Shown here one piece after another: positions 21,001-42,141 of a stretch of 64,000 nucleotides of DNA. Position numbers and translations under genes: made by a program. The notes beneath the pieces are model-generated. The model searched no databases and was not told the origin of the DNA. It was given only the letters and a program-made list of their open reading frames with translations. Within the stretch, counting starts at the first letter, position 1, and each line of letters begins with the position of its first letter. The stretch is taken from positions 186,001-250,000 of IMG/VR virus record IMGVR_UViG_3300020473_000011. One strand, 5' to 3'.

Positions 21001-22988
21001 ACCTGCATCATAGGTGATAGCGTTTCAGCTTTCTTTGAGACGGCTGAGTTTCCATCACGCTTTGCTTGGCGCTGCTGTTTCTTACTTTGCTGTGGCGTAG
21101 GGTGTGCCATCAAGTCGTTTTTACGGTCTGTCTTACCGACTGCAATTGATGCCGTCGTTGAGCTTAGCTGACCTTTTACCTTACGCTGACTACCGATGCT
21201 CGTTCTACGCGTTTCTGCGGGGGCAGGTAATGCTAGTACGGGCGAAGTATTTCTACGAGACGTACGTGGCTGATCAGGCAGCGCCAGAGTACTTCCTGTA
21301 TTGTTGTAGTTAGCAATACTTTTAGAACCCGACACCGAACGACGGTTATCAGTGTTCGTGATATTCGTTACGTTGCTGTTGTTCGTTACGCTTTTCGCAG
21401 CGTTTGCAGCATCCTGTGCCGACTTTGCAGAATTGACTGCTATGGTCTCTAGAGCGTCTAGCGTCTTTTCTTGCGTACGGTCTTTCGGCGCAAACAAGTC
21501 TAATTCTGTTGTTTTCGATTGCCCTGCATTCAAGCCATCAATATGCGCTGTGGAAGTTACCTTACTTCCTGCACTTGGCAATCGTGGGACTTCGGTCTCG
21601 ACATCAGCGCTGTTTTGCTTGAAAGCGCCTAGAAGTCGGTCTTTTAATGGTGCGCGCTTTGGAGCAGGTAAGGCCAGTACTTCCTGTTTCTCTTCTTTCT
21701 GCTCAGCATGGCGCTGCTTTTTATCTTCAAGGTACTTGTCGACCTCTTCGGCTGCACCTTCAAAGCCAATTGACCCTAGTGCGGCAGAAACCACCTCACT
21801 GCGGATATGAGAAAATGCGCGTGAACCAAAATCGCGAAGCATCCCCTTTTCTTTTTCGTTAGGCTCATCCTCGAAGTCGGCATCAGGGCGCTGATCCCCC
21901 TTGCCATCTTTAGACGACGCCTTATTCGACGTGCCTAGCCGTGCGGCTTCTTCCTGCTTTTCTGCACGGCGCTCACCGCGCTCTTCTATAAAACTTGAGA
22001 CCTCTGCGGCAGCACCTTCAAATCCGACGGTACCTAGGACAGCACCTAGCGCTTCTTCACGAAGACCAGCAATGTCGCCTGTCATGATCTTAGTTAGGAA
22101 GCTTGTACCACCTTTTTCTGGGTCGTCTTTACCGAACTGCCCCTTAGAGTTCCGTTTTTGTTTAGAATTTGCCTTCTTCTCTTCGTTTTCCTTAGCTTTC
22201 TTTTCGCGGTCTTCTTTTGACTTTTCTTTTTCAGCCTCACGCAGATCAAAGTCACGCTGCTTGTTCTGCTCATCGTGTACTAAACGGTTATGTGTTAGCT
22301 GGTCTTGATTGACTGATAGAACCTCGTGAACACCTCGGCTTAGCGTACCATTCTCTGAGGCTGAACTGCGTAAAAGCTCTACGATGTTACCTAGCTGTTT
22401 TGTCTGGTGAACATTGATACGGGCTTCTTGCTCGGCGAGCTTACGAATAACCGCCATATCATCAGCATCGGCGGCCGTATGGTCACCCAGTGATGCAAGT
22501 TGCTTTAACAGGACTGCTTGTTGCTTTGTGCTGGTGGCATTTTCAATAGCTTGAAGATAACCGTCAGTTAAGTCACCAACCGTGATCGGTTTAGCTGCCT
22601 GTATGTCGGACAGCTGGCCAGCTAGTGTATTTAAGGCATTAGCGCTATCAGCCATTTCCTCTTTTGTTAGTGAGAGGCCATCGGCTAGCTTAGTAAGAGC
22701 AGGTGTTTGATTAAAAGCATTATCAGCAACGTCACCAACATCGTTACGTGCAAACGACATTGCGCGCAACTGTGCAACTAACTCGGCTAAGTCATCTGCA
22801 ATGCTATCACTTGCCATATTAGTCGTATTATTGGTAGCCGCTGTAGGTTGAGCCAAAGCAGCCAGCTGAGCTTCTAGGGTAGACGCCAGCGTGTCTGAAC
22901 TTGGAAGAGTTGATGACGGCTCTAGGTGGTCTCTGACCTTACCGTAGTCAGATAAGCGGTCAGCTGTTTTAGTAAAGCCAAGTGGCAT
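18084..22988 (-). CDS. Tape measure protein
   Basis: 1634 aa, Ala/Gly/Ser-rich with coiled-coil stretches; follows tube and chaperone genes; KVPLLAPLMAAYD...GGIVSGLSFGLLD segment. Confidence 0.8.
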   Translation of the reverse strand: MPLGFTKTADRLSDYGKVRDHLEPSSTLPSSDTLASTLEAQLAALAQPTAATNNTTNMASDSIADDLAELVAQLRAMSFARNDVGDVADNAFNQTPALTKLADGLSLTKEEMADSANALNTLAGQLSDIQAAKPITVGDLTDGYLQAIENATSTKQQAVLLKQLASLGDHTAADADDMAVIRKLAEQEARINVHQTKQLGNIVELLRSSASENGTLSRGVHEVLSVNQDQLTHNRLVHDEQNKQRDFDLREAEKEKSKEDREKKAKENEEKKANSKQKRNSKGQFGKDDPEKGGTSFLTKIMTGDIAGLREEALGAVLGTVGFEGAAAEVSSFIEERGERRAEKQEEAARLGTSNKASSKDGKGDQRPDADFEDEPNEKEKGMLRDFGSRAFSHIRSEVVSAALGSIGFEGAAEEVDKYLEDKKQRHAEQKEEKQEVLALPAPKRAPLKDRLLGAFKQNSADVETEVPRLPSAGSKVTSTAHIDGLNAGQSKTTELDLFAPKDRTQEKTLDALETIAVNSAKSAQDAANAAKSVTNNSNVTNITNTDNRRSVSGSKSIANYNNTGSTLALPDQPRTSRRNTSPVLALPAPAETRRTSIGSQRKVKGQLSSTTASIAVGKTDRKNDLMAHPTPQQSKKQQRQAKRDGNSAVSKKAETLSPMMQVATNPLAGKDGEALVGSTLKLNKEEMDVIDQEMILIKDMRKTLKRVEGALPDESLLGGLLGGGGGIGDLLGAGDLFDDFLGGRKNRRRDRVGNQDIESGRRGRRGGTRGGRVRSALGNMASTAKAAISGAATGMVNLATGGEGGGLLDMAGDFLDFGGSDRDRSRGSGRRKGGLGSRIGGAVSGAFSKGKGFLGNIASKGAGLLGGAGGVGGALSKGKGFLGNIASKGAGLLGGAGGLLGGVGGGIASVAGGASGLLKGAGSLAKGVLGKVPLLAPLMAAYDGFNGWNNAGSNFGLEEGQEATTGQKMSSALGGIVSGLSFGLLDEGSVSRGIHSAGSMLGDVGNSLMNRMTFGLWGGDDDEEEAKSAAAKIAGTSSDALAPNADELVDDALPSLATSGALAGTAAMTGLSLAKDDSKELDLFKPRDRVNKQTGSSSAIASQAAKSLATSVGKSSNNESSSLLSKASSIASTAASYTPLGLAASGVSSLLGLGSASDDDEKPSLLSRMSDAASTAMSYTPIGMAATGASSLFSSDASGSVPLSAKEEKTPSMFDRLKDAASTAVSYTPMGLAYKGVSSLVSDGSTGAAATPSGKASEPSSMFDRLKDAASTAVSYTPMGLAYKGVSSLVSDGNTGAAATPSGKVSESPSMFDRLKDAASTAVSYTPMGLAYKGVSSLVSDGNTGSINLHGKTADSPSLLSRVGGAIGTAASYTPMGLAYNAWSSMFGSESKPSSSSIASKDGTFFNPSLAEGGSADQLFMGDGYTAKGGLSSAATIVGRAPDLSNRSTGDSQLDAHLQNARNVINKTFGLSNDGSSVSKVSNLASYSNLTNIGGSTSSKSNVSSRAFSTGAIGSLLSQGNTAMGGTLAGAATVATAGGQLNAHVEMPPTLRDEKLMNDTLMSPTVQAQLSGAATGGQGKRPDRNNPNVVSASRPKAQRRTTVSSPRPSSSGHAGSFNVDDTGIAIMNSILFD
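18952..19352 (-). repeat. 147-bp (49-aa) tandem repeat inside the tape measure gene
   Basis: SMFDRLKDAASTAVSYTPMGLAYKGVSSLVSDG three times; three more degenerate SYTPxG units flank it. Confidence 0.9.
20292..20445 (-). repeat. 84-bp-period duplication inside the tape measure gene
   Basis: SKGKGFLGNIASKGAGLLGGAGG twice. Confidence 0.85.
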
Positions 22989-24958: not shown

Positions 24959-25489
24959 TTAACCGCCTGCGCCTGCACCCATGGTGAAGTAGTCGTAACT
25001 AAGCGTCATTACTGGGCGCATGATGTCTGACGTGTCACCGCCAAGTTCACCACCCCAGTCGATACCCTCTAGGTACGCACCGATAACCTTGTAGTGCCAG
25101 ATTACTTCGTCTTGTTGGTTAAGGCGCTGTAGTAAGAAGTCCGTTTGGTACTCCGAACGTTTAACCTGACGACCTACACCTGACTCCCAGATAGCTTCAC
25201 GCCAGTTGTGCAACATAGTGTGAACTACGTTATCAACCGTTTCGGCCATGGTTAGTGTGATTGTGTGCTCGTCGTCACTGATACCAGCTTGCTTGATGTG
25301 GTGACCACGAATTTGAATGTCGATACTTTGTACTGCCGACGTTGGTAGTGCACTCGACAAACAGCGTACGTTGATGTCTTCTGACGACGGGAACTCTACA
25401 CCCGACGGCGCAGCGAACTGTACGTCCCACTTGTACAAGACTGCAAAGTCATCTAACTTACGGATGTCTTCAATATTTAGACCTGCCAT
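24959..25489 (-). CDS. Tail tube protein
   Basis: 176 aa directly after the sheath; YKWDVQF, RG.HIKQAG, ITLTMAET..., LEGIDWG, TLSYDYF. Confidence 0.85.
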   Translation of the reverse strand: MAGLNIEDIRKLDDFAVLYKWDVQFAAPSGVEFPSSEDINVRCLSSALPTSAVQSIDIQIRGHHIKQAGISDDEHTITLTMAETVDNVVHTMLHNWREAIWESGVGRQVKRSEYQTDFLLQRLNQQDEVIWHYKVIGAYLEGIDWGGELGGDTSDIMRPVMTLSYDYFTMGAGAGG

Positions 25490-25542
25490 TTCAGGATTCT
25501 CCTATCAAAAATTAAGTACGAGAACTACTTAAAGGGGAGCGC

Positions 25543-27420
25543 TTACGCGCCACCCAGTAGTTGTTCAGCTAGGCCGAAATCAAGACCCGTCGGCAAGATC
25601 GCTGTCGTGAACGGGATGTACTCAACCGAACGCGTCGGCTTAACGAATAACCACAAGTTCATACGACCTGCGTCGATGTCTGTCGCAGAGTTGTTCGTCT
25701 CGTCACAAACAACCTTAAAGTCAGAAACACCACGGCGCGCCTTGATGTTGTTCATGTACGACGTAACCATCATTGACGCGATAGAACGCGTTGACTCGTC
25801 GTTCAAGTCGAATAGGAAGCCTTCTAGGGCATCACGGATTGCAGGCTCGATAGTGATCAACATCATACGAACGTTGATGCGGTCTAACGCGCTTGGCACC
25901 GATGCAAGAGTCTTCTGACCCCAGATAAGAACACCCTTACCAGCCGCGAAACGAATAGGGTTGATACCCGCATCGTACAGTAAGTCCATTTCACCCTTAT
26001 CGAAGCGACGACGTGCATCAAGTACCTTGATAACACCACGGTTTAGACCAGCGGCTGGGTACCATACTTCTGAGTTCATCGCAGTCTTGCTCAGTGCTAA
26101 AGCGGCGTACGCTTCTGGTGAGACAAACACACTACGATTGTTGAACTTGTCGTAGATCTTACAGTGAGGGCTATAGATAGCGCCGTACGAGCTGTTCGCG
26201 TTAAGAACAAGGTTGCGGTAGTCCTTGATCTCGTTAAGGTACGAGCTTGAAGACTCGGCGCTGTAAGGCGTCGATAGCATCGCAAAACAGTCCTTACGTT
26301 TCTCAGCTAACGCTAAAAGCGCTTTCTGGTACGACGGTAGCGTGTAGCCGCCATCCATCAGGATTGTGATCGGGAAGCTGTCTTCGTTTTCCAGCTCTTT
26401 CAGTGCAGCTTGCATGTGGCCTGCCATTACGGCACCACCTAAGTCACCGCCTGCTAGGAACTGGCCTTCGAATACGTCGGCTGGCGCACCCGAATAGAAC
26501 GGGTTAACGAACGCACGAATGTATTCCGATTGTTCAAGCTGGTTCTCGATAAAGATGTTACGGTTGAAGCCGTCAACAGCACCTTCATCTAATGAACACG
26601 TGAAAGTCTCGCGAGGGTCGCGCTCGTTGTCCAAGTACACTTGAACTTCAAACGTGTTCGGCGTCTTCGCAACCTGACGGTATAGACCCATCATGATCTT
26701 GCCGTCGCCTTGGTCAGTCAGCGCCAAGAACTCACCGTCTTTCATTTTGTCTTCCGACTCAGATAGCCACAGCTTGCCGTCGACGTCACGAGTAACCCAA
26801 TAGGCTGTATCGGCTTTAATACCCGTAGGTAGTGCGCCAATGGTGCCATCTTCTTTGATCACACTGAAACGTACGACACTGCCTGTGCTGAACTCTTGAG
26901 TCGCACTTAGGCTGCCATCTGGGATCATTACGCCACTGCCGTCGTCGACTTCGTTAAAGCTCACAGCTTCAACTTGACGATAGTTATGAACTTGGATGTT
27001 CACGCGATTAGCCCAATCACCTTGGTCTACGGCTGTAACGATGAACGCTTCATCGTCGTCTGCTTCAACTGACGCTAGGTCATCGAAACCGTCGGCAATC
27101 GCAGCTGTTGCTGCTTCTTTACCAAGCTGACCGATAGCTGCTGCGGCGAACTTTGCGTCGTCTGCTAGGACACGCTTAACCCATAGCTTATCGGCACCGC
27201 CAAGGTACGTAAGCGCTGAGAAGTATGCGTTATCAAAACCAATTTTGATTTTGTTGTCGATTGTGTAACGAGATAAGAACATGTTCTCGTTGGTGTTAAG
27301 CTGCGCTTCCACTGAACCGCGCTCTGCACGAGGGATTAATACGCATGCGTAAATACCTTCACTACCGCCCACGCGCTGTGAAAGATTCACTTCTTTCAAG
27401 ATAACTTGTGCTGATGACAT
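25543..27420 (-). CDS. Tail sheath protein
   Basis: 625 aa; WYPAAGLNRG, LYDAGINPIR, LIWGQKTL, ALDRINVRMMLI are gp18-type sheath motifs. Confidence 0.97.
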   Translation of the reverse strand: MSSAQVILKEVNLSQRVGGSEGIYACVLIPRAERGSVEAQLNTNENMFLSRYTIDNKIKIGFDNAYFSALTYLGGADKLWVKRVLADDAKFAAAAIGQLGKEAATAAIADGFDDLASVEADDDEAFIVTAVDQGDWANRVNIQVHNYRQVEAVSFNEVDDGSGVMIPDGSLSATQEFSTGSVVRFSVIKEDGTIGALPTGIKADTAYWVTRDVDGKLWLSESEDKMKDGEFLALTDQGDGKIMMGLYRQVAKTPNTFEVQVYLDNERDPRETFTCSLDEGAVDGFNRNIFIENQLEQSEYIRAFVNPFYSGAPADVFEGQFLAGGDLGGAVMAGHMQAALKELENEDSFPITILMDGGYTLPSYQKALLALAEKRKDCFAMLSTPYSAESSSSYLNEIKDYRNLVLNANSSYGAIYSPHCKIYDKFNNRSVFVSPEAYAALALSKTAMNSEVWYPAAGLNRGVIKVLDARRRFDKGEMDLLYDAGINPIRFAAGKGVLIWGQKTLASVPSALDRINVRMMLITIEPAIRDALEGFLFDLNDESTRSIASMMVTSYMNNIKARRGVSDFKVVCDETNNSATDIDAGRMNLWLFVKPTRSVEYIPFTTAILPTGLDFGLAEQLLGGA

Positions 27421-27475
27421 CAGTTAGTCTCCACTTTGATTAAGTCAGATAAGTAAAATCGTTGTACAACGATAT

Positions 27476-27646
27476 TTATTTCGCGCGAACGCCTTTAGGA
27501 AGGGCACCAAGCTTTGAAGGCTCAATGTTTTTAACCTTACCGCGAGGTGCAAGCATTAAAGCTTCGCCGTCGTACGAAATAGTTACTGGGTGATCAAGGG
27601 TGGACGCTAGCGTCACCAACTGAGGTGTAGCTGATTTTTTAGCCAT
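27476..27646 (-). CDS. Small hypothetical protein (56 aa)
   Basis: ATG 27646 (MAKKSATPQLV...) with GGAG RBS. Confidence 0.6.
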   Translation of the reverse strand: MAKKSATPQLVTLASTLDHPVTISYDGEALMLAPRGKVKNIEPSKLGALPKGVRAK

Positions 27647-27912
27647 AATGCTATGCTCCAAATATAAAGTAAAATAAGTCGCCTTGGACGCGACGACGCA
27701 GCGTGATAGCTGCTTACTCAACTCACATAGCTCAGGTCTCGGCTGATTGCAGAGGGTGCAACCAGTAAACTAATAGTACAAAGATGTGCTACCAGTTCCA
27801 AACAATTGTACAACAAATTTTAAGCGTGTTGCTAGCTCGTATTTTAAACTAATTGAAAATAAACAAGGTGACCCTTGTACAATGAATGTAGTCGGGGTCA
27901 CCTAATCCAGTG

Positions 27913-28554
27913 TTAGGCAGGCTCTTTTATGTGAATTTGCACAGCACCACCCGTGAAGATGTTTTTTATGCGAGCAAGACTTTCACCCGTTGAAACGATA
28001 AAGGCACCCCTGACTTTGGCTTGGGCACCGATTGTCTTGTAGTAGCCCTCGTCAATAGAAAGCTGAAAGTCCTCTAGCGACTCCCACTCAACCTTGTACT
28101 CAAGGTAATCGTCGAGTGCAGGTATGTGCAGTTTGAAGCGTTTCTCGTTCTTCACGGCCGAACTGGTTGAATAGAGCATTTCAAACCGTTCTAGCTCTTC
28201 CATCTGTGTTGTCACGTACAAGAAGCGGAAATCAAACTCACCCATGAGTACCTTTAGCTGAGTGTGATCCGTGCCGCTATCATCTTTAGGATGGATGATT
28301 TTTTGACGTGATCGCTTACCAAAGACCTCATTACTTCGCAGTGTACTGCGGTTGAAAAGAAGTAAGGGCAGGGCTGTTGTATCGAAAACCTGCTTTTTAT
28401 CATTCTGTGCACGCAGCGCCTCAAGCCCGTCACGGTAGCTCAGGTTCGGCTGGAATAAAGCCGTTGCATTAGGTAAGTGCTGACCCAATTCTTGTAGCAG
28501 TTGCCAAACAACCATAGAGGGCGTTGAGTAAACGTCTATCTTATCGGCGGCCAT
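27913..28554 (-). CDS. Putative tail completion / terminator protein
   Basis: ATG 28554 with AAGGAG RBS; upstream of the sheath; function inferred from position. Confidence 0.5.
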
Positions 28555-29236
28555 GACTGTCTTCTCCTTCAATCGGCGTTAAGTACGTTTTAGTTAACAG
28601 CTCTTCTGTAATGCCCAGTGTCTTCTCATGTAGAACACGGTAATGGAACAGGGCACCGTCTGAGCGCTTAAATGTGATCTTGTCATCTGGTAGCAGGTCA
28701 TTATTGGCAAACACTTCTACGGCCTCAAAACCACCGATGTTTCGTGTACCCGCCGTGACCCAATCTCGACGTGGTGGAATGATCACCGTTTCGAAGGTTT
28801 CCTCACGGTACTTAGGATTTTCGTCCTGTATCGTAATATCGCCCGCCATTGAGCCATAAACTTCTTCGACGGCTTCTTGGACAGTGACCTCTTGGACTGG
28901 CTCAGGCTCTGGCTCAGGTTCTGGCTCAGGTTCTGGCTCAGGTTGTGGGTTACTCAACGAGATAGCACCCCCGTAGAGGCCACCCATAAAGCCCGCTGGT
29001 GCCGTCGGTGCAGGTGGTACGTATTCTTCCTCTTCTTCTACTGGTTCAGGCTCTACTACAGGCTCAGGGGTTGGTTCTGGGACTGGCGCAGGTTCGACTA
29101 CGGTACTATCATCGTCGGTGTCTTCGATGGCCACCTGACGTATCACTGTGACTGGGACACCAAATAGCTTAATGAGTACAGGTAGGCTATTACGGCTCCA
29201 ACCTGCAACAGCGCCTTCAATAGCGTTGTACAACAT
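28541..29236 (-). CDS. Putative head-closure/neck protein with Pro-Glu-rich insertion
   Basis: 231 aa; G.PVTVIRQ N-terminus and LLPDDKITF...YRV C-terminus around a low-complexity insert. Confidence 0.5.
28897..28944. repeat. Four copies of a 12-bp tandem repeat (CTGGCTCAGGYT) encoding (EP)n
   Basis: Read directly from the sequence. Confidence 0.9.
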
Positions 29237-29287: not shown

Positions 29288-29755
29288 TTACGTATTTTCG
29301 TTACCCACAAATATCTTGAAAGTGAAGGGGTGACCCGTGAAGCCTCGGCGGGGCACTACAGGTCTAACAGTAAACGAGTCTTGACCTTCATAACCAATAG
29401 CAGGTATGTACACCAGCTTGTCGTACATGGGCATAAACTCAACAACCCGCAGTGTGCCGAACTCAGGTAGGCGCGTCACCTCAAATGTACAACGGAACTT
29501 TTCTGAAAAGTCTTTCTCAAGTTCCTTTTGGTCAATGAAGTGCATGTCGTAGTAAGTACGCTGATAGTCATACGTCCAATAGTCGATCTGCCTGTGCAAC
29601 CAAAGACCACCTGCACTGAAACGACTGTCTTGTGTGTGGTCTAAGAATGAGAACCACACTTCTTGGTCTTTTCTAATGGCTGTTTCGTACGGGTCAAATA
29701 TGCGTACGTAAGCAGGGCGTCTGTTTGGCTCTACAGGTGCAAACATTGTTAGCAT
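29288..29755 (-). CDS. Hypothetical protein with C-terminal Ig/cadherin-like (Big_9-type) motif
   Basis: VTRLPEFGTL...LVYIPAIGYEGQDSFTV. Confidence 0.55.
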   Translation of the reverse strand: MLTMFAPVEPNRRPAYVRIFDPYETAIRKDQEVWFSFLDHTQDSRFSAGGLWLHRQIDYWTYDYQRTYYDMHFIDQKELEKDFSEKFRCTFEVTRLPEFGTLRVVEFMPMYDKLVYIPAIGYEGQDSFTVRPVVPRRGFTGHPFTFKIFVGNENT

Positions 29756-29764: not shown

Positions 29765-30196
29765 TCACTCATCTAATAGCTTTACGGGGTCGAGCACTAT
29801 CATTAGGCCATGTTCCTGATGTCGTACGACACCACTCACGGCAGGGTTCTTTGACCATTCGTAAGGCTCAATCATTGTGCGGTCAAGATGTAAAACATCA
29901 ATAAATTCAGTTACAGCAAGCGCGTAGGATTGGTCGGCCAAGTCAAACACAATAAAGTAGCCCTGTGTTGTCGCAAGGTCTTTCGGGTAGTCTAGCCCAA
30001 GCCTAAGTACACCGTTTACAACGCAAAGTGCCTGACCCCTGTGAAGCGTTAAGCCTTCGGTTCCGTCCGACGTTAAGTTGTCGGCTTGCACTGCTTGTCG
30101 TCGAATCAATTCACGAATATAGCTGGCATTAATCGCATAGGTTTCATAGCCAATCTTCACGGAAAGCCATTCGTCTTGTAGCGCTGTGGTGCTCAC
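29765..30196 (-). CDS. cheW: CheW-domain protein
   Basis: WLSVKIGYETYAINASYIREL / GLTLHRGQALCVVN / YALAVTEFIDVL / VSGVV...MIVLDPVKLL reproduce the CheW block pattern; GTG start. Confidence 0.8.
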   Translation of the reverse strand: MSTTALQDEWLSVKIGYETYAINASYIRELIRRQAVQADNLTSDGTEGLTLHRGQALCVVNGVLRLGLDYPKDLATTQGYFIVFDLADQSYALAVTEFIDVLHLDRTMIEPYEWSKNPAVSGVVRHQEHGLMIVLDPVKLLDE

Positions 30197-30342
30197 AACA
30201 TCACCTCGTATCTGTCCTGTTTGGCCAGCGTCAGGCCAGCAAGTCTCAATTAGATAGTATTGTACAAAGTATTGGCTGTATTGTCATCGAACCTTGATGG
30301 CGTTAGACTTCATTGGTGATTAATTGAGACAGGTGAACTCGT

Positions 30343-31080
30343 ATGAGTGCTGAGATAGAAACAACCGATGATAATGCTGCATCACGTGCAGATAAGATTA
30401 TTAGCCGTGCCTCGTTGGTCGGCTTGTTTAGCAGTAATGAAGCCAAGGTGGTTGCTGGTAACTTCATTAAGACACACGGTGGTGCCTACGATGGTGATTG
30501 GCACCTCGTAAAGTACGTGTACCTTGAGGGCAGTGATAACGTCGTTAACCAAAAGATGATGTCATGTATTGGTATAGGTAAGTCTTACGAGTACCCCATA
30601 TCTATGAGAAAGGCTTCTATTGTGCGTGAGCACGAGTCTGCCCTCCATAAGTTTCATGGCAACCGCACGGTAATTTGGGTGGATGACTTAGGCAACGTAT
30701 TTACGACGCGACCTGAGCTAGGATTAGAAGACGATAAGCCTATCAAGAACGTGTATGTTAAGACACGATACCTCTTGGACAATGGAAGCTTTACGGTTAA
30801 TGACCTGCCGTTCTCTCCCGTGGGCTTCGACTGGCACATCATGGGTAAGGCCGAAAAAGCATATATCATTGGCAGCCTGCCTTATAAAGGGTCGTTACTT
30901 AATGAACTCAACGCTGAGTTCGATGCTGTAATGAAGCTGCGCGAAAAGGCCATGAAAGGTTTATTTAAGCCTAATGAGGTCGAATCGTTCGAGTTTATCG
31001 CCGAGGATGAGTGTGACACGAGTCTTGTAGGTGAGGAACGCTACTTCTTCGAGCTGAATACTTTGCTATTCAGTCAGTAG
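30343..31080 (+). CDS. Hypothetical protein
   Basis: 245-aa ORF; leader-like SRADKII motif near the N-terminus. Confidence 0.75.
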   Translation: MSAEIETTDDNAASRADKIISRASLVGLFSSNEAKVVAGNFIKTHGGAYDGDWHLVKYVYLEGSDNVVNQKMMSCIGIGKSYEYPISMRKASIVREHESALHKFHGNRTVIWVDDLGNVFTTRPELGLEDDKPIKNVYVKTRYLLDNGSFTVNDLPFSPVGFDWHIMGKAEKAYIIGSLPYKGSLLNELNAEFDAVMKLREKAMKGLFKPNEVESFEFIAEDECDTSLVGEERYFFELNTLLFSQ

Positions 31081-31081
31081 C

Positions 31082-31108
31082 AAAAAGCCCGCATTACGCG
31101 GGCTTTTT
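31082..31108. terminator. Bidirectional terminator
   Basis: AAAAAGCCCGC-ATTAC-GCGGGCTTTTT. Confidence 0.85.
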
Positions 31109-31114
31109 AATGGA

Positions 31115-31855
31115 TTAACCAAGCGCTAGATTTACTTCGCACGTACGGTGGTCGCCCGTACTGATACCGTAAACTATCGTGGCTTCGGTTGCGCTGCGTC
31201 GGTCATAGCTTATGATCGTAGGGTTACCGCCCAAGAGGTGGGCTACCTCGTTCAACACATCTGTAATACGTGCACGGTTATCCTTCGCTGACAAATGACT
31301 ATACTGGCCATTCACCAAAATGTTACGCAATTCTTTTACCGACATATCGTTCACTGACGGCAATTTACGAAGCCGTGGTAGTTCCGCCGCTACATGCGGG
31401 CTAAATACATTGGCGGCACGTACCGTACGAACCACAATGTCGACTTCGCCCACTGTTTCAACACCGTTCCCCTCTCTAGTCATGGCCTTCATAAAGGCTT
31501 CAATACTTGGGTATTTGCTATCGTTTTCTTTGAGGTAATCAAAGACCGCTTCTTCATTACGACCGTTGACGTTTTCAAGTGTGACACGGTCTAGTTTTTT
31601 CCCTTTTTCCATAGCGCCATCAAGCGCTGTAATCGTGACCTCATCGTACATAAAATCCCACTCAAGTAGGAATTTACCGTCGGCCGTGTAAACATCTTCC
31701 GTCGCGGTTCGCTCACCATTTTTAAGCTCAGCCACTTCGCTAAGCTTAGTATAGGGCTTGATTAGAATTGTTGTGCTCTTCATCGGGTCGCGACGTGCTT
31801 CTGTTAACGCGTCATAATTACCCTGACATTCATGAAGTCTCTTAAATGCACTCAT
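31115..31855 (-). CDS. Paralogue family A, member 5 (unknown function)
   Basis: FSP...LPRLRKLP...NGQY motif shared with four neighbours. Confidence 0.8.
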   Translation of the reverse strand: MSAFKRLHECQGNYDALTEARRDPMKSTTILIKPYTKLSEVAELKNGERTATEDVYTADGKFLLEWDFMYDEVTITALDGAMEKGKKLDRVTLENVNGRNEEAVFDYLKENDSKYPSIEAFMKAMTREGNGVETVGEVDIVVRTVRAANVFSPHVAAELPRLRKLPSVNDMSVKELRNILVNGQYSHLSAKDNRARITDVLNEVAHLLGGNPTIISYDRRSATEATIVYGISTGDHRTCEVNLALG

Positions 31856-31871
31856 TGATTTGTTCCTTCTG

Positions 31872-32570
31872 TTATCTTAGGCCGAGGTCTACTTGCAGGC
31901 GGCGTGTGGTGTAGCGTAATAATCCCGCTGTGCGGCTAGACGCCTCAAACTTCATGCGGTCGATAAAACGGCCTTTTTCAAACAGGCTCTCTAACTCACT
32001 TAACACATCGGAGATACGATCCTTTCTGAGATTTGCAAAGTAGCTGAACTGGCCATTGGCAAGTATGCGCATGACGTCTCGATGGCTCCAAGTAGTCGGG
32101 ATCTTTGTTAATCGTGGTAGATTGGCCATGGCCATAGGGCTGAACGTTTTTGATGCCTCGACCTCGTAGACTCTGATTTCAAAGTCATCAAAGTTCTCGT
32201 CTTTCACGCGTTCAATAAAGTCATCGAGTGTTCCAAATTCTGCATCGAGGTCAGCGATAGCCGCTGCCATGTCGTCACCCTCATACTCCACTAAGATGTC
32301 CCGTAGCCTCTTATCAGCGTCAGGGTCATCGTACAGCTCTGTCACATAGAGTGATTCTGAATGCCAGTTTACGCGGTAATTACCATCTTCGGAGTAGATG
32401 TCGACACCGTCGTCGTAGTCTTTAAGTGCCATAAGGTCAGTTAAGGTCTCGAATTTCTCGAAACGTAGTGCCGTTGGCTGTTTTAGTAGGTCGAAGCGCT
32501 CATCTAGGCTTCTGTGTGCCATGGCTTCATAGCGCGCGTGGCATTCGTGTAATTCATTAAATGCTGTCAT
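31872..32570 (-). CDS. Paralogue family A, member 4
   Basis: FSP...LPRLTKIP...NGQF. Confidence 0.8.
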   Translation of the reverse strand: MTAFNELHECHARYEAMAHRSLDERFDLLKQPTALRFEKFETLTDLMALKDYDDGVDIYSEDGNYRVNWHSESLYVTELYDDPDADKRLRDILVEYEGDDMAAAIADLDAEFGTLDDFIERVKDENFDDFEIRVYEVEASKTFSPMAMANLPRLTKIPTTWSHRDVMRILANGQFSYFANLRKDRISDVLSELESLFEKGRFIDRMKFEASSRTAGLLRYTTRRLQVDLGLR

Positions 32571-32578
32571 GACTACCC

Positions 32579-33310
32579 CTAACCTAGCCCTAGGTTTACT
32601 TCACAGATACGGCGTCTATTGTGCTGGTTATAGTACTCAACCATCGCGCGTGTGGTGTCTTTGTTGTCTGCCATGATGATAGAGCCATCACCTTGCACAA
32701 GACCCTGTACCTCTGCTAAGAAGTCGGTAACGCGCTTTTGATTGCCTGTCGCCAGTGACTTAAATTGGCCGTTTGCAATCACGCGAGCAAGTATATCGAC
32801 GCTCCAACGGTTAGGGAGCCGCGCCACGCGCTTTAGCTTTGAAGCAGTGACAGGGTTGAAGATGTTCTTACCTTTTTGGATGCGTACAGCAAGGTCAAAA
32901 TCGTCAATACGCGCGTCATCCGTAAGCGAGTTCATGAACGCTTCAATAGTTCCATGTTCCTCGGCCATACGACCCAAATAGATGATAATAGAGTCAAGGC
33001 TCTCGTAGCCGTTTTGGTCAAGCTCAACGTACTTAACCGATTTACCTGCCTGCATTGCATCTGTAATGTCTGTGATTGCGAGACCCCATGGATCCCACTT
33101 CACCATGTACTTACCATCAGCACTGTAGACATTAAAGTTGTAATTTTTGAATTTAAGTAGGTCTTCAACACGCTTGAAGTCTTCAATGTGGATGTTTGTT
33201 TTGCTCTTCATTAAAGCGAGGCGACGTTCGTTAAGCTCTGCGCTTTCATCAAAGTCCAAGCCCGTGATGAAGTCTTCTGTGCTCTCTAGTAGGGTAGCAA
33301 TTACGGTCAT
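32579..33310 (-). CDS. Paralogue family A, member 3
   Basis: ESAELNERR; FNP...LKRVARLP...IANGQF. Confidence 0.8.
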   Translation of the reverse strand: MTVIATLLESTEDFITGLDFDESAELNERRLALMKSKTNIHIEDFKRVEDLLKFKNYNFNVYSADGKYMVKWDPWGLAITDITDAMQAGKSVKYVELDQNGYESLDSIIIYLGRMAEEHGTIEAFMNSLTDDARIDDFDLAVRIQKGKNIFNPVTASKLKRVARLPNRWSVDILARVIANGQFKSLATGNQKRVTDFLAEVQGLVQGDGSIIMADNKDTTRAMVEYYNQHNRRRICEVNLGLG

Positions 33311-33377
33311 TGTATTCTCACGCTCAAAAGGAAAGATTAGGGCTGCCTTATTTGCAGCCCTATACGGTTACTTGGTC

Positions 33378-34157
33378 TTAATTTTGTAGGTTAACGATAC
33401 ACGTGCGTGAGTCGTTTGAGTGTGCACGGTAACGTACACGAACTTCATGCGAGTCTTCGATTTCTTCGTGATAGCGGCTAACTTCAACATCTTTATTCAC
33501 GATGTCTTTAAGCTCGCCTAGCGGGCTAAGACGCGCATTTCGAAGGTCTTCACGGTCTGTCGGCTCGTCGTAGCCCATGTAGAAGTTCTGCTTTAGAACC
33601 GAGAACTGGCCATTAGCGATGACCTTAGCTAACGCGTCTAACGTCCACTTATTAGGAAGCTTTGTAAGGCGCTTTAACTTAGCAGCTGCAAATGGGCTAA
33701 ATGTACTTTTCGCCTTGTCTTCAACTACTGTAATAGTTACTTGGTCAACGTCAGCACGCTCTGTTGTTGCGTCCATGAACTTCTCAATGGTGCCATGCTC
33801 TTCTTCGATGGCCACCAAGAAATTATGGATAGCTGCTGCACCACCTTGCCATGAGTCAAGCGTCACGGTCTTGCACGTCTTGCCTACGCGCATTGCGTTT
33901 TTAATTTCAGTGATGCTGATCTGCATACCTGAACCACGGTAAATTTTAATGCTGAACTTCTCGTCTTTTGTGAAGTAGTCATAGCCCGATGTTTGGTTGA
34001 TGAAATCCGTTGGCTTAGTCCAGTTTTCGAACTTCATGCTGTGCGGTAGGTTCTCTTTCAGTAGATTGAATCGACGCTCGTAAAGCTCTGCTGATTCGCA
34101 GAAATCGTCTGTCATTACTGTGTCTAGTGCTTCTAAAGCATTATTAATACGTGTCAT
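33378..34157 (-). CDS. Paralogue family A, member 2
   Basis: DFCESAELYERR; FSP...LKRLTKLP...IANGQFSVLKQ. Confidence 0.8.
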   Translation of the reverse strand: MTRINNALEALDTVMTDDFCESAELYERRFNLLKENLPHSMKFENWTKPTDFINQTSGYDYFTKDEKFSIKIYRGSGMQISITEIKNAMRVGKTCKTVTLDSWQGGAAAIHNFLVAIEEEHGTIEKFMDATTERADVDQVTITVVEDKAKSTFSPFAAAKLKRLTKLPNKWTLDALAKVIANGQFSVLKQNFYMGYDEPTDREDLRNARLSPLGELKDIVNKDVEVSRYHEEIEDSHEVRVRYRAHSNDSRTCIVNLQN

Positions 34158-34216
34158 TGCAATACCCTTAAAATGGAAAAGAGGGTTAGCCCCTCTTATA
34201 ATTTTGAAAAAATGGA

Positions 34217-34996
34217 TTAACGGCCACCAGCCATGTTAAACACCATGCTACGTGAATCGTTTGAGTGCGCGCCGTAGTTGATCACAACACGGCCATCATC
34301 AAGCTCTTTGGTGTAGTCGACTTTCAGGCGCTTCTCTGCAAACCCTTTGATTTCTTCCATCGGGTCAAGGCGCATGTCCGTCTTGTTCGGATCGTTCGTC
34401 GGCTCGTCGTAGCCCATGTAGTAATCTTGCTTTAGAACAGAGAACTGGCCGTTAGCAATAGCCTTCATCATTGCATCTGCATTCCAACGCTTAGGAAGCT
34501 TAACAAGACGCTTTAGTTTTGCTGCGTTAAATGGGTTAAAGACTTCTTTAGACTTCTGCTCGTAGACATGAATATCAACGCGGCCGCTCTCGGTCTCGAC
34601 GCTGCTTGTTTCAATGTGGTTTACGAAGTCTTCTAATGAACGGTATTCACCACTTGTCGCCAGCTTGTGAAGGTATTCTGATGTAGGCTCATAGCTGCGA
34701 GGAACCGCTGATAGTGAGATTTTCTTACAGGTTTTACCTGCTTTCATACCGTGTTCGATGTCCATGATTTCGATTGAACCCATGTACGCGTGAATACGAT
34801 GCTTACCGTCTTTTGTGTAGATAGTTTGACCGACGCTGATGTCATCAATCTCAGTCAATTCTACGTCTTTGATAATAAGCTTTGAGCTTTGCTTTAGAAG
34901 GTCAAAACGGCGTTCATTTAGTTCTGCTGATTCGCAGAAATCATGAGCTTCTAACTGTTCGGTGACAGCTAGAACCTGTGCGATTCTTGTGGTCAT
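34217..34996 (-). CDS. Paralogue family A, member 1
   Basis: DFCESAELNERR; FNP...LKRLVKLP...IANGQFSVLKQ. Confidence 0.8.
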   Translation of the reverse strand: MTTRIAQVLAVTEQLEAHDFCESAELNERRFDLLKQSSKLIIKDVELTEIDDISVGQTIYTKDGKHRIHAYMGSIEIMDIEHGMKAGKTCKKISLSAVPRSYEPTSEYLHKLATSGEYRSLEDFVNHIETSSVETESGRVDIHVYEQKSKEVFNPFNAAKLKRLVKLPKRWNADAMMKAIANGQFSVLKQDYYMGYDEPTNDPNKTDMRLDPMEEIKGFAEKRLKVDYTKELDDGRVVINYGAHSNDSRSMVFNMAGGR

Positions 34997-35138: not shown

Positions 35139-35369
35139 ATGTCGAAAAGTAAGAAAATGTCGGTCGATGCTGGCCGTGGGACTATTAATGACTGCGCCTT
35201 GGCAGCCCTTGTAACCAGTAAGGTTTTCCGTACTCAAGTTGTAAAAGCGAAGAAAGGGAAAGGCTCGTACAAGCGTAACGGAAAGCATAAGCTAAAAGCT
35301 TATCCAGTAGCTTCTTTAATTAAGAAGTTAGCGGATAGCCTTTTAGCGCGTATTTCATTACTGCGATAA
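35139..35369 (+). CDS. arfA: Alternative ribosome rescue factor A homologue
   Basis: GRGTINDCALAALVTSKVFRTQVVKAKKGKGSYKRNGKH matches the ArfA signature (G.I.DNA..AL....LFR.......KGKGSY.RK.KH); GGAG RBS. Confidence 0.88.
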   Translation: MSKSKKMSVDAGRGTINDCALAALVTSKVFRTQVVKAKKGKGSYKRNGKHKLKAYPVASLIKKLADSLLARISLLR

Positions 35370-35418
35370 CTGTTGTACAATGATTTTCGATTAATTGAGA
35401 CACTTTTGAGGAAAACTA

Positions 35419-40392: not shown

Positions 40393-42141
40393 CTATACCT
40401 CCAAACTTAGTGTAGATTTCGCGTAGGAACGCCAAAATTTGTGGATTCCTTCGCTGAACAGCTTAGATTCTGCGGCTTTTACGTTATCTTTAACGAACAA
40501 AGCAAGCAGGCTCTCAATTCTTGCCAACAACTTACCCTTTGATTTCTCGAAGTGGTCGGCATCCTTGTACTTACTTGAAGACGCAAGAACGACTTCTTTG
40601 TAAGACAACAATTGGTAGGCATCGTCGATAGTGTCAACTAGCGCATAGTTGCTGCACGTTAGGCAGCTATCAAACATCGTACACGGCATTTCCTCAGCAC
40701 TGGCTAGACCAAGCTTCTCAAGGATAGGCGCATGTTTGCGTTGTGATTTAGTTGGGTTTGCACCCTCATACGGGTTAGAACAACGACCGCCCGATGGTAC
40801 AGCCTCATTCTTTTTGTACTTCTGGTTTATGGCATCCAGCGGTAGTAGCTCAATACCAAGCTCGTCAGCAAGTTCTTGCTTGGCCTCGTCGACCGTCAAA
40901 CCCTTACCGAGTTTACTTAATACTGTGATGGCTGCGTGTGACTGCTCGTAGTTCTCCGCTTCGTTACCACTGCCGAGGTAGTGCTCAACTGCGACGCCTG
41001 TTGAGTGCCCAGCGTCTTTTGCAGCGGCTACGATACCTGCTGCTCTGGTAGCTGTTTGGAAACGGTTTTTACGGAAGCGCTCGGCACTAAGCATTAGCTT
41101 GGAACCATCGTCAGCCTGTACCTTAAAATGTCTGAATAACATATCAGACACAGCGGTGATGAAGTTCATCACAGGCTGAACAATCTTGCCGTTGACTTGT
41201 AAGAAACTAAATAACTTCCCATCAGCTGCGGGATTATGCTTTGTATTCTCTAACAGTAGCTCTACCAGTGCTATCTCACGAGGTGTAGACATTAAGCGCG
41301 AAACATCATGGTTCGCACGTGCTTTATGCGCATTGATCTCATAGACTGTGCTCGACTTAGATTTTTTGCGCGTGATACAGTCAATTGTTAGGCTCTGCAA
41401 TACAGCCGTATTTAGACCTGTGTATAGCGATAAGCGGAACATGCCTAGGGTACTTAATAGCCACCAAGCTGTCCCTTTAGCCTCTGGTACGTTATAAGAA
41501 AAATTGCGGTCATTAGCCCTCAAACTAAACGTGCTACCGTTAGGGTTGGCTTTCAATTGCTTAGACAGCTGGTCGTGCAAGTCACAAACCGCTTTCTTTA
41601 GGCAGCGTTGCTCGGTCTGAGAGTAAGCGCGGCGTACCTCACGACCACCACGTTTAACAAAAGGCGGCGTGGCTCCTATGATCGGCTTAGGGTCAATACC
41701 CGCGACCACCAGTAGCTTCTTGTAAGCTGACCAGTCCCCCCATGCGGTTGATTGCTTGTAGCGTACCCGAGGGTCACGTACTTTTTGAGTCCAGTACTCA
41801 ATGACCGCGTTACCACCTTCTGGTGAATCTAGGCTTACTTCTAATTCGTCACTTAGGGCTGTGAGTTTGCACCAGCGCTTATACGTTGACTTAATAGTGC
41901 TTGCGCTATTTGTCGCTGTCGTAACCCATTCCCATAATGCGTTAACGATGTGCTGGCGTGCTGGCACAAGCTCAGCATGCACGTCGCAATTTAGATGGTA
42001 AAGATGTGATACAGCCACTTCGTAATTTTCCCCGCTTGGAAGCGTTACCTTACGCGATTGTGCGTGCATTGGTAAAGCCAGCGCTGTAGGCTTACTCGGG
42101 GCTTTTAAACTTGATGCACGTGATCGACTAATTCTTCGCAT
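40393..42141 (-). CDS. Degenerate tyrosine-recombinase-like protein
   Basis: TGLNTAVL (catalytic R replaced), KARAN, ERFRK, AGHSTGVAVEHY; C-terminal Cys cluster. Confidence 0.65.
   Translation of the reverse strand: MRRISRSRASSLKAPSKPTALALPMHAQSRKVTLPSGENYEVAVSHLYHLNCDVHAELVPARQHIVNALWEWVTTATNSASTIKSTYKRWCKLTALSDELEVSLDSPEGGNAVIEYWTQKVRDPRVRYKQSTAWGDWSAYKKLLVVAGIDPKPIIGATPPFVKRGGREVRRAYSQTEQRCLKKAVCDLHDQLSKQLKANPNGSTFSLRANDRNFSYNVPEAKGTAWWLLSTLGMFRLSLYTGLNTAVLQSLTIDCITRKKSKSSTVYEINAHKARANHDVSRLMSTPREIALVELLLENTKHNPAADGKLFSFLQVNGKIVQPVMNFITAVSDMLFRHFKVQADDGSKLMLSAERFRKNRFQTATRAAGIVAAAKDAGHSTGVAVEHYLGSGNEAENYEQSHAAITVLSKLGKGLTVDEAKQELADELGIELLPLDAINQKYKKNEAVPSGGRCSNPYEGANPTKSQRKHAPILEKLGLASAEEMPCTMFDSCLTCSNYALVDTIDDAYQLLSYKEVVLASSSKYKDADHFEKSKGKLLARIESLLALFVKDNVKAAESKLFSEGIHKFWRSYAKSTLSLEV

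What the first reader, a model, noticed from the sequence alone, without database searches (positions are those of the whole stretch)
29765..30267. Phage-encoded CheW with the phage's own regulatory motifs
Seen: a stand-alone CheW-pattern protein (keeps the Arg of the NLRG-type motif as LHRG), preceded by TTGTACAA (30260) and TGAGAC (30243) and heading the neck/tail operon; no receptor or CheA gene is in the window. Established: CheW couples chemoreceptors to CheA in polar arrays. Inference: the phage may rewire or jam host chemotaxis/motility (dispersal of infected cells, exclusion of flagellotropic competitors) or use polar arrays as a landmark. I do not recall this as a standard phage gene.
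Basis: partly seen in the sequence, partly recalled or inferred. Interest (0 to 1): 0.72.

Follow-up and report, generated by a model that had tools for sequence, protein, structure and literature searches.

The report
CheW adaptor gene in jumbo phage
A very large marine phage, whose relatives are carried by Pseudoalteromonas isolates, encodes its own fast-evolving copy of CheW, the adaptor that wires bacterial chemoreceptors to their kinase; this may let the virus interfere with how infected cells navigate, but that is not yet tested.

Summary
Window 29765-30196 (-) is a 143-aa ORF that matches Pfam CheW (70.7 bits, cut-off 23.5). It folds with high confidence (pLDDT 92) into the CheW two-barrel fold (TM 0.81-0.82 to E. 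coli and T. maritima CheW). Both upstream motifs are real and enriched.

The window lies in a 281.6-kb fragment of a roughly 416-420-kb myophage. Relatives sit in Pseudoalteromonas isolate assemblies. No receptor, kinase, Hpt or response-regulator gene was found in the 281 kb.

The gene defines a tiny family: 6 clusters among 5.8 billion proteins. Wherever context is known, it sits just before a conserved Ig-like gene and the neck and sheath genes. It evolves far faster than they do (33-50% against 59-92% identity). It is missing at that spot in a 69%-sheath relative and in more distant phages.

The Arg62/Glu38 pair and most of the receptor-groove residues are kept. The kinase-contact residues are mostly changed and the array-linking loop is deleted.

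My best reading (confidence about 0.4) is a receptor-tip binder that uncouples or disperses host chemoreceptor arrays. The main rival is an exapted virion or assembly protein. Function is inferred, not shown.

The parts
29765..30196 (-). CheW-family gene, 143 aa, GTG start at 30196, TGA stop at 29765-29767
   Evidence: ORF. (Pfam CheW, 70.7 bits). (AF2 pLDDT 92.3; TM 0.81-0.82 to CheW in 6S1K and 2CH4). (groups with stand-alone CheW).
30202..30207 (-). GAGGTG Shine-Dalgarno-like site, 5 nt before the GTG start
   Evidence: Read from the sequence.
30243..30250 (-). ATTGAGAC motif, 46 nt upstream of the start codon
   Evidence: There are 32 copies in the record against 9.6 in shuffles, most of them just before start codons (often ATTGAGACtATG). 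The motif is kept upstream of the CheW gene in L006, and as CGAGAC in L004.
30260..30267 (.). TTGTACAA palindromic core. Here the flanks are non-consensus. It overlaps a -10-like TACAAT at 30259-30264.
   Evidence: 149 copies; 20-bp palindromic consensus aaAATCgTTGTACAAtGATTTt. (sigma-70-like site).
30282..30287 (-). -35-like ATGACA, 17 nt upstream of TACAAT (10 of 12 match to the sigma-70 consensus)
   Evidence: ATGACA is conserved at the same place upstream of the CheW gene in L004 and L006.
30324..30330 (+). Second TTGAGAC copy, facing the divergent 245-aa gene and 12 nt before its ATG
30343..31080 (+). Divergent 245-aa gene of unknown function. It is lineage-specific and silent in the RNA libraries.
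   Evidence: no family hit. (zero depth over 30153-31137 in both RNA runs). (the upstream neighbour differs in each lineage).
29288..29755 (-). 155-aa gene, 9 nt downstream of the CheW gene, with a Big_9/cadherin-like Ig domain. It is the most conserved neighbour.
   Evidence: Atlas score 0.94, Big_9. (74-86% identity across lineages). (kept in L073 without CheW).
27476..29236 (-). Neck-type genes of 231, 213-219 and 56 aa, homologous to gp287, gp288 and gp289 of Rhizobium phage RHph_TM30
   Evidence: BLASTP 2.7e-6, 6.5e-24 and 1.1e-4. (annotation of RHph_TM30).
24959..27420 (-). Tail sheath (625 aa, 25543-27420) and tail tube (176 aa, 24959-25489)
   Evidence: phrog_23 at 3.9e-73; Phage_sheath_1 and 1C; tail tube phrogs.

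Best explanation
The gene encodes a diverged, stand-alone CheW-family adaptor carried by a roughly 420-kb jumbo myophage whose relatives are carried by Pseudoalteromonas. It was captured from a cellular CheW before this phage subclade diversified, and it has since evolved quickly under purifying selection. It is transcribed during infection together with the virion genes. Proposed mechanism (inferred): the protein still docks on the hairpin tips of host chemoreceptors. It uses the conserved hydrophobic groove, stabilised by the Arg62-Glu38 pair. But it has lost most of the contacts that canonical CheW makes with the CheA P5 domain (interface 1), and it lacks the loop that links core units into the hexagonal lattice (interface 2). 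Made in quantity, it would compete with host CheW and CheA-P5 for receptor tips. That would uncouple the kinase and loosen or disperse the polar arrays, so infected cells would stop steering. CheA output would fall, leaving few reversals and no gradient tracking. Shown here: identity, fold, phage context, restricted distribution, synteny, evolutionary rate, residue pattern and transcription in nature. Inferred: binding to receptors, failure to couple CheA, and any effect on behaviour.
For: Family and fold:
- Pfam CheW 70.7 bits.
- AF2 pLDDT 92.3.
- The top 18 PDB matches are all CheW or CheA-P5, with TM 0.81 to E. coli CheW in the core signalling unit 6S1K.

Origin:
- The five phage proteins form one clade (support 100/99) that joins stand-alone CheW (85/85). 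They are apart from CheV, CheA-P5 and ParP of five marine gammaproteobacteria.

Accessory, host-facing behaviour rather than a core structural part:
- CheW is 50/33/32% identical between lineages, while every neighbour is 59-92% identical.
- Between two near-identical genomes CheW has 2 non-synonymous and 3 synonymous changes, against 0 and 19 in the sheath gene.
- The gene is absent at this position in the P. citrea-associated relative, which keeps the 155-aa gene, the 56-aa gene and the sheath. It is also absent in a 43%-sheath relative and in Rhizobium phage RHph_TM30, whose neck genes are homologous.
- The upstream neighbour differs in every lineage.

Still functional:
- The frame is open and CheW-like in six lineages. 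pN is 0.23 against pS 0.76.

Residue pattern, using the E. coli interface lists in PMC13098124:
- E38 and R62 are invariant.
- 9 of 12 receptor-contact positions are kept in kind.
- At interface 1 the host-invariant P52, N60 and V97 are replaced, and the C-terminal contacts E155, M156 and L158 have no counterpart in 4 of 5 proteins.
- The interface-2 residues E121 and F122 fall in a 4-residue deletion shared by all five proteins.
- Engineered E. coli CheW R117D/F122S disperses arrays while core units still signal (PMC5181776).

Transcription:
- Marine metatranscriptome contigs 100% identical to the window cover 29766-29976 (depth 28 and 4) and the neck and sheath genes. The adjacent stretch 30153-31137 has zero depth, which argues against DNA carry-over.

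Host:
- The P. umbrosa assembly that carries the related phage has its own CheA, CheW, CheV and ParP sets, so targets exist.
- From my own knowledge: excess CheW impairs chemotaxis and array formation in E. coli (Liu and Parkinson 1989; Cardozo et al. 2010).
Against: - No binding or phenotype data exist.
- The gene sits at the head of the virion module and is translationally close to a conserved Ig-like gene, which would also suit a structural or assembly role.
- Several receptor-groove positions are also core positions, so their conservation may reflect fold maintenance only.
- The R62-E38 pair has a structural role as well (PMC3828127).
- The phage proteins are only 18-29% identical to any CheW-domain protein in the P. 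umbrosa assembly that carries the related phage, and they sit on a long branch of length 1.57. The binding partner could therefore have changed altogether.
- Timing of expression is unknown. The promoter has a sigma-70-like -35 element that the sheath promoter lacks.
- The host of this exact phage is inferred from relatives, not shown.
Confidence: 0.4

Rival explanations
1. Exapted fold: the CheW-like double barrel has been recruited for a phage-internal job. It could be a neck or tail assembly chaperone, or a minor virion component working with the neighbouring Ig-like 155-aa protein. On this view it has nothing to do with chemotaxis.
For: - It is always the first gene of the block 155 aa, neck genes, sheath, tube in every lineage with known context.
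- The gap to the 155-aa gene is 9 nt here, 3 nt in L006, and a 7-nt overlap in L009.
- It is transcribed alongside the neck and sheath genes in metatranscriptomes.
- Canonical CheW motifs are lost (P52, P67, D70N, G99A, D103T) and it sits on a long branch.
Against: - It evolves two to three times faster than every structural neighbour, including the 155-aa protein it would have to fit.
- The P. citrea-associated relative keeps the 155-aa gene next to the 56-aa gene and the sheath, with no CheW there, and no CheW of this family came up from that assembly in the searches.
- Phages with homologous neck genes (RHph_TM30, L075) have no CheW-like gene.
Confidence: 0.25
2. Landmark use: the protein binds host polar chemoreceptor arrays not to disable them, but to place a phage process or cargo at the cell pole.
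For: The fold and receptor-face evidence is the same as for the main explanation. Arrays are polar in these bacteria, and the host assembly encodes a ParP-type CheW-domain protein next to cheW.
Against: The protein is a bare 143-aa single domain with no extra domain to hold a cargo. No evidence was found for polar steps in this phage.
Confidence: 0.12
3. Virion-delivered effector: the protein is made late, packed in the particle, and injected to act on the arrays of the next host at the start of infection.
For: It is placed in the virion gene block and co-transcribed with it. Jumbo phages are known to package ejection proteins (own knowledge; see also PMC5694885, listed).
Against: There are no proteomic data. 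A few injected copies could hardly titrate thousands of receptors. No packaging signal was identified.
Confidence: 0.08
4. A different host partner: the fold is kept to bind something other than array proteins. One candidate is RecA, which binds CheW in Salmonella.
For: RecA-CheW interplay is reported in PMC4718596 (listed). The kinase-binding surfaces have diverged.
Against: Nothing in the sequence points specifically to RecA or any other partner. The receptor-face residues are the best-kept surface.
Confidence: 0.05
5. A hitch-hiking remnant with no present function.
For: It is the fastest-diverging gene of the block.
Against: The frame is intact with a full-length confident fold in six lineages. 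19 residues are invariant across the five lineages aligned with the window's own protein. pN is far below pS, and the gene is transcribed.
Confidence: 0.05

Closest known systems
Canonical CheW (E. coli CheW in PDB 6S1K/8C5V; T. maritima CheW in 2CH4)
   Same: It has the same two-subdomain barrel fold (TM 0.81-0.82) and is a single-domain protein. The Glu38, Gly57, Arg62 and Gly63 equivalents are kept, and most receptor-groove residues are kept in kind. On the tree it groups with stand-alone CheW.
   Different: It is about 20 residues shorter. Identity is 19-22% to E. coli and Thermoanaerobacter CheW chains, and 21-25% to the stand-alone CheWs of the P. umbrosa assembly. The interface-1 residues P52, N60 and V97 are replaced, and the C-terminal CheA contacts are missing. 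The interface-2 loop is shortened by 4 residues. It is encoded by a phage with no che genes around it.
Engineered interface-2 mutant CheW-X2 (R117D/F122S) of E. coli
   Same: Both lack the CheW determinants of the contact that links core signalling units. In E. coli this disperses arrays and lowers sensitivity and cooperativity (PMC5181776). This is the closest functional analogy for what the phage protein may do.
   Different: The phage protein has a natural deletion rather than point changes, and its interface 1 has also diverged. Whether it enters core units at all is untested.
Other CheW-domain proteins of marine gammaproteobacteria: CheV, the CheA P5 domain and ParP
   Same: All share the Pfam CheW domain.
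   Different: On the tree the phage clade lies outside the CheV group (100/97), the P5 group (90/95) and the ParP group (100/99). It has no receiver, kinase or ParC-binding part.
BFVD entry A0A248SKJ8 (139 aa, unnamed viral protein)
   Same: It is the only other viral protein with a CheW fold in the BFVD library (E 5.8e-10, TM 0.82).
   Different: It is only 22% identical. Its virus and gene context could not be looked up here, and it is not a member of the six-cluster family.
Phage proteins that switch off host motility machines (for example Tip and Aqs1 of Pseudomonas phages, which block the pilus ATPase PilB; own knowledge)
   Same: The concept is the same: a small phage protein aimed at a host motility or behaviour apparatus.
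   Different: The target and fold differ. Those proteins are early superinfection-exclusion factors, whereas this gene sits with the virion genes.

Membership tests
CheW family (Pfam PF01584; stand-alone adaptor) | Sequence match to the family profile above the curated threshold | tested here: met
   70.7 bits against a cut-off of 23.5, E 1.2e-19, covering profile positions 2-135 of 138. The six-frame search of the record gives 70.9 bits.
CheW family (Pfam PF01584; stand-alone adaptor) | Two intertwined five-stranded barrels (the CheW/P5 fold) | tested here: met
   AF2 pLDDT 92.3 and pTM 0.86. Foldseek TM is 0.81 to 6S1K_C and 0.82 to 2CH4_Y. All 18 matches with E<=0.001 are CheW or CheA-P5.
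CheW family (Pfam PF01584; stand-alone adaptor) | Conserved Arg62-Glu38 pair (E. coli numbering) | tested here: met
   R53 and E29 are invariant in the five phage proteins and align with R62 and E38. The role of the pair is described in PMC3828127.
CheW family (Pfam PF01584; stand-alone adaptor) | Single-domain architecture, and closer to CheW than to CheV, CheA-P5 or ParP | tested here: met
   It is 143 aa with one domain. The phage clade joins stand-alone CheW with 85/85 support, though the branch is long.
CheW family (Pfam PF01584; stand-alone adaptor) | Receptor-tip binding surface | tested here: inconclusive
   9 of 12 E. coli MCP-contact positions are kept in kind (L20, I33, V36, Q37, E38, I39, V105, D107, V108). 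Binding itself was not tested.
CheW family (Pfam PF01584; stand-alone adaptor) | CheA-P5 binding surface (interface 1) | tested here: inconclusive
   Only about 5-6 of 17 contact positions are kept in kind. The host-invariant P52, N60 and V97 are replaced, and E155, M156 and L158 have no counterpart in 4 of 5 proteins. The sequence argues for weakening, but binding was not measured. The co-fold job gave no answer.
CheW family (Pfam PF01584; stand-alone adaptor) | Array-linking surface (interface 2: R117, E121, F122) | tested here: not met
   E121 and F122 fall in a 4-residue deletion shared by all five phage proteins. The R117 position reads E, S, A, Q and Q. The interface is defined in PMC5181776 and PMC13098124.
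CheW family (Pfam PF01584; stand-alone adaptor) | Encoded with chemotaxis partners (cheA, cheY, MCP genes) | tested here: not met
   No MCPsignal, HATPase_c, Hpt or Response_reg match was found in the 281-kb record, which is about 67% complete.
CheW family (Pfam PF01584; stand-alone adaptor) | Couples receptors to CheA kinase control | not testable with these tools
   This needs biochemistry or genetics.
Conserved neck/tail structural genes of this myophage lineage | A homologue is present in related phages that share the neck and sheath genes | tested here: not met
   None is found in RHph_TM30, at the same spot in L073, or in L075.
Conserved neck/tail structural genes of this myophage lineage | Evolves at the pace of its structural neighbours | tested here: not met
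   33-50% identity against 59-92% for eight neighbouring genes.
Conserved neck/tail structural genes of this myophage lineage | Present in purified virions | not testable with these tools
   No proteome is available.

The most novel reading that the evidence does not exclude
This is the first viral protein aimed at the bacterial chemosensory array. It would be a naturally evolved, dominant-negative CheW: it caps receptor tips but cannot couple CheA or link core units. A roughly 420-kb Pseudoalteromonas phage would use it to switch off steering in infected (or carrier-state) marine bacteria. That could change where infected cells go in particle-rich seawater and how the virus spreads.
Probability: 0.35. 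Interest if true: 0.8.

Novelty: new variant of a known kind. Interest (0 to 1): 0.6.

Why it matters
Chemotaxis governs how marine heterotrophs such as Pseudoalteromonas find particles, algae and surfaces. A virus that rewires or silences it would add host behaviour to the list of things phages manipulate. It would also affect encounter rates and carbon flow at the microscale.

For the chemotaxis field, the family offers a natural experiment. It is a CheW that has kept the receptor face while shedding both kinase-side interfaces. That makes it a ready-made probe of array assembly.

The work is directly testable. The gene is small. Culturable Pseudoalteromonas isolates whose assemblies contain related phages are named in the databases. 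The assays (swim plates, foci imaging, pull-downs, cryo-ET) are standard.

If it turns out to be a virion or assembly protein instead, it would be the first CheW fold used as a phage building block. That would also be new, though of narrower interest.

Tried and rejected
Searches and tests that gave nothing usable:
- The co-fold of the phage CheW with the P5 domain of a Psychromonas CheA returned 'no answer' (score 0.01; controls were not run). It counts neither for nor against binding.
- The sequence search of the PDB with the single protein found nothing. Only the profile and the fold search did.
- NCBIfam gave no hit. PHROGs gave only a weak hit to an unnamed family.
- Two pattern scans of IMG/VR found no relative other than the window's own record. 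Two further attempts failed for lack of conserved stretches.
- The GTDB genome scan with the protein found none.
- tblastn against GenBank phages found none at 1e-5. At E<=10 the only hits covering more than 80% of the query were two unannotated faecal contigs. A host CheW finds six records, mostly fragments.
- Literature searches for phage-encoded CheW returned only author names and host gene lists.

Ideas considered and dropped:
- That the CheW and 155-aa genes are diverged versions of the Rhizobium-phage genes at the same positions. There is no similarity.
- That the nearest cellular relatives are the triple-CheW proteins ranked high. Their rank comes from summing three domains at about 25% identity each.
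- The short matches to Vibrio anguillarum phages lie in a Pro-Glu repeat and say nothing about the host.
- dN/dS could not be computed between lineages because synonymous sites are saturated.
- That TTGTACAA is a late-gene-only signal. It is spread evenly over the record and has no fixed distance to start codons, so promoter, operator and terminator-loop roles remain unresolved.

Full report
**What is there**

The minus-strand ORF at 29765-30196 encodes 143 aa. It has a GTG start preceded by GAGGTG. It matches Pfam CheW over nearly the whole profile (70.7 bits, cut-off 23.5). NCBIfam and a single-sequence PDB search gave nothing, which shows how diverged it is.

An AlphaFold2 model built on 34 aligned sequences is confident (pLDDT 92.3, pTM 0.86). 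Its 18 significant PDB matches are all CheW or the homologous P5 domain of CheA. The best are E. coli CheW in the core signalling unit (6S1K_C, TM 0.81) and T. maritima CheW (2CH4, TM 0.82).

**The genome**

The window is bases 186001-250000 of a 281,557-bp IMG/VR virus record judged about 67% complete. Near-identical copies of the protein lie on contigs of 416 and 420 kb. GC content is 47.7% and the record has 14 tRNA genes.

Downstream of the gene lie a tail sheath, a tail tube and a T4-type baseplate hub. The closest described phages by sheath are the roughly 200-kb Rhizobium phages of Kleczkowskaviridae, at 39% identity.

Sheath homologues of 69-86% identity are annotated in assemblies named Pseudoalteromonas umbrosa, P. 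citrea and Pseudoalteromonas sp. J010. The 50%-identical CheW homologue is annotated 'chemotaxis protein CheW [Pseudoalteromonas umbrosa]'. The host is therefore most probably Pseudoalteromonas. This is inferred from relatives. The phage's TnpB points only to marine gammaproteobacteria in general.

The phage is widespread in seawater metagenomes.

**No partner genes**

No MCP signalling domain, histidine-kinase ATPase, Hpt or receiver domain is found in the 281 kb.

**Distribution and context**

A search of 1.84 billion representative proteins found four close clusters. After those, only ordinary cellular CheW-domain proteins appear, at about 25% identity. A profile search of 5.8 billion clusters found six family members in all.

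Where flanks are known (window/L002, L006, L009/L074, L010), the order is always the same: CheW, a 155-aa gene, about 231 aa, about 213 aa, 56 aa, sheath, tube. The 155-aa gene follows within 9 nt here, 3 nt in L006, and overlaps by 7 nt in L009. It carries a Big_9/cadherin-like Ig signature.

The 231-, 213-, 56- and 172-aa genes are homologous to gp287, gp288, gp289 and gp292 of Rhizobium phage RHph_TM30. That phage has no CheW-like or 155-aa homologue.

A relative with a 69%-identical sheath, in a P. citrea assembly, keeps the 155-aa gene, the 56-aa gene and the sheath. It has a toxin-antitoxin pair where CheW would be. A relative with a 43%-identical sheath also lacks CheW.

Upstream of CheW every lineage has something different: a 245-aa gene on the other strand, a 201-aa gene, an AcrVA2-like gene, a 206-aa gene or a 284-aa gene. 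The gene thus sits on the seam between a variable island and the conserved tail block.

**Rate of change**

Between three lineages CheW is 50, 33 and 32% identical. Its eight neighbours are 59-92% identical, and the adjacent 155-aa gene is 86, 81 and 74%.

Between the window and a near-identical genome, CheW has 3 synonymous and 2 non-synonymous codon changes. The sheath gene has 19 and 0.

Against the 64%-identical homologue, pN is 0.23 and pS is 0.76 (saturated). The gene is therefore constrained, but loosely.

**Origin**

In a maximum-likelihood tree I compared the phage proteins with the CheW, CheV, CheA-P5 and ParP domains of Psychromonas, Shewanella, Vibrio, Vreelandella and Photobacterium. 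The five phage proteins form one clade (100/99) on a long stem. That clade joins the stand-alone CheWs (85/85).

Against the P. umbrosa assembly that carries the related phage, identity is 18-29% to any of that assembly's own CheW-domain proteins. It is an old capture, not a recent host copy.

**Surfaces**

I used the E. coli contact lists compiled from 6S1K and 8C5V (PMC13098124). I mapped them through the profile alignment and a Vreelandella CheW that is collinear with the E. coli protein.

| Surface | Finding in the five phage proteins |
|---|---|
| Arg62-Glu38 pair | Both invariant |
| Receptor contacts | 9 of 12 positions keep their character |
| Interface 1 (CheA-P5 within a core unit) | About 5-6 of 17 positions kept in kind; host-invariant P52, N60 and V97 replaced; C-terminal contacts E155, M156 and L158 without counterpart in 4 of 5 |
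| Interface 2 (links core units into arrays) | Residues E121 and F122 lie in a 4-residue deletion common to all five |

Other family-wide changes are D70N, G99A and D103T. In E. coli, the double change R117D/F122S at interface 2 disperses arrays while core units keep signalling (PMC5181776).

**Expression**

Two marine metatranscriptome libraries contain contigs identical to the window.

| Region | Depth in X9 / X11 |
|---|---|
| Sheath | 226 / 58 |
| Neck genes | about 17-51 / 2.5-15.5 |
| 3' half of CheW (29766-29976) | 28 / 4 |
| 30153-31137 (intergenic region and divergent 245-aa gene) | 0 / 0 |

DNA runs cover the silent stretch evenly. That internal silent stretch argues that the signal is RNA. 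These are unstranded assembler contigs, so the depths are rough.

The sheath-side contigs end at 27784 and 27798. That is 8-22 nt downstream of the TTGTACAA at 27806-27813, which is consistent with transcripts starting after that motif.

**The motifs**

TTGTACAA is the core of a 20-bp palindrome (aaAATCgTTGTACAAtGATTTt). It has 149 copies in the record, and about half of them lie in the roughly 10% of sequence that is non-coding. It shows no -35 signal and no fixed distance to start codons.

ATTGAGAC is enriched threefold and mostly lies 0-50 nt before start codons, often as ATTGAGACtATG.

The copy before CheW has non-consensus flanks. It overlaps a sigma-70-like promoter (ATGACA, 17 nt, TACAAT). 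The -35-like ATGACA and a -10-like hexamer are kept at the same place in L004 and L006. TTGTACAA itself is absent in L006, L008 and L009.

The motifs are therefore real phage signals. The CheW gene, however, may have its own host-type promoter, and its timing is open.

**Interpretation**

The data fit an accessory, host-facing protein better than a core structural one. The retained receptor face with degraded kinase faces suggests a competitor that occupies receptor tips without coupling CheA or networking units. I put this at about 0.4.

The main rival is an exapted assembly or virion protein (0.25). It rests on position and co-transcription. It is weakened by the evolutionary rate, by the gene's absence in relatives, and by the 155-aa gene standing without it.

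Variants are use of arrays as a polar landmark (0.12), virion delivery (0.08), another partner such as RecA (0.05), and no function (0.05).

**Novelty**

CheW itself is textbook. A phage-borne, interface-trimmed CheW family has not, as far as the surveys here show, been described:
- No match in 50,697 GenBank phage records at 1e-5.
- Six mostly fragmentary records with a host CheW query.
- One CheW fold in BFVD.
- No paper found.

I rate it a new variant of a known kind, with interest 0.6.

Noticed in passing
window 35139-35369 (+): The phage encodes an ArfA homologue (alternative ribosome-rescue factor A; Pfam PF03889, 74 bits). An ATTGAGAC-led 178-aa gene follows it. The gene is also present in the near-identical genome L002.
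   Followed up: partly
whole record; for example window 27462-27469, 27806-27813, 30260-30267: A 20-bp palindrome, aaAATCgTTGTACAAtGATTTt, has 149 core copies in 281 kb, against 17 for the next commonest 8-bp palindrome. About half the copies are in non-coding DNA, and some sit in hairpin loops (15353, 27875). RNA contigs end 8-22 nt downstream of the 27806 copy. Whether it is a promoter, operator or terminator element is not resolved.
   Followed up: partly
whole record; window 30243-30250 (-), 30323-30330 (+), 35394-35401 (+): ATTGAGAC occurs 32 times against 9.6 expected, and is usually 0-50 nt before a start codon, often as ATTGAGACtATG. This suggests a conserved mRNA 5' end or translation-start signal, and possibly near-leaderless messages.
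   Followed up: partly
window 42224-42760 (inside ORF 42128-43399, -); also G000:C1:60733-61239: The phage record carries tyrosine recombinase genes (Phage_integrase, 44 and 101 bits), and relatives sit in Pseudoalteromonas isolate assemblies. This hints at a temperate, episomal or carrier-state lifestyle for a roughly 420-kb phage.
   Followed up: no
window 54154-60195 (-): Three consecutive genes of 406, 638 and 448 aa match a tail-sheath family (phrog_12249), in addition to the main 625-aa sheath. A neighbouring 446-aa gene (58855-60195) was not scanned. The Rhizobium relatives also have a second 'sheath' gene.
   Followed up: no
window 31115-34996 (-): Five tandem genes of 232-259 aa lie here. 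At least the first two share N-terminal sequence motifs. Three were scanned and had no family match. The two whose region was laid (31115-32570) are covered by RNA-library contigs. The array is absent from the corresponding place in L006 and L009.
   Followed up: no
window 44609-53935 (-) and 18084-22988 (-): There are giant ORFs of 3108 and 1634 aa. I did not scan them against any family library; Pfam families precomputed for the homologous genes in relatives list none. In L006, L009 and L073 the homologous giant gene lies only 1-3 kb upstream of the CheW or 155-aa position. About 14 kb has therefore been inserted in this lineage.
   Followed up: no
G000:C1 about 19217-20455 (outside the window): An IS605-type TnpB gene (412 aa) lies in the phage. 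It is 69-70% identical to copies in Psychromonas and 55-60% identical to copies in Halomonas, Vreelandella and Shewanella.
   Followed up: partly
L009 8533-9807; L074 3606-4880: In the 75%-sheath relative, the gene directly upstream of CheW is AcrVA2-like (an anti-CRISPR family). This underlines that the position is an accessory-gene hotspot.
   Followed up: no
window 28541-29236 (-), repeat at about 28890-28944: The 231-aa neck-type protein carries a Pro-Glu repeat insert. That insert causes spurious 43-bp matches to Vibrio anguillarum phages and breaks short-read contigs.
   Followed up: partly
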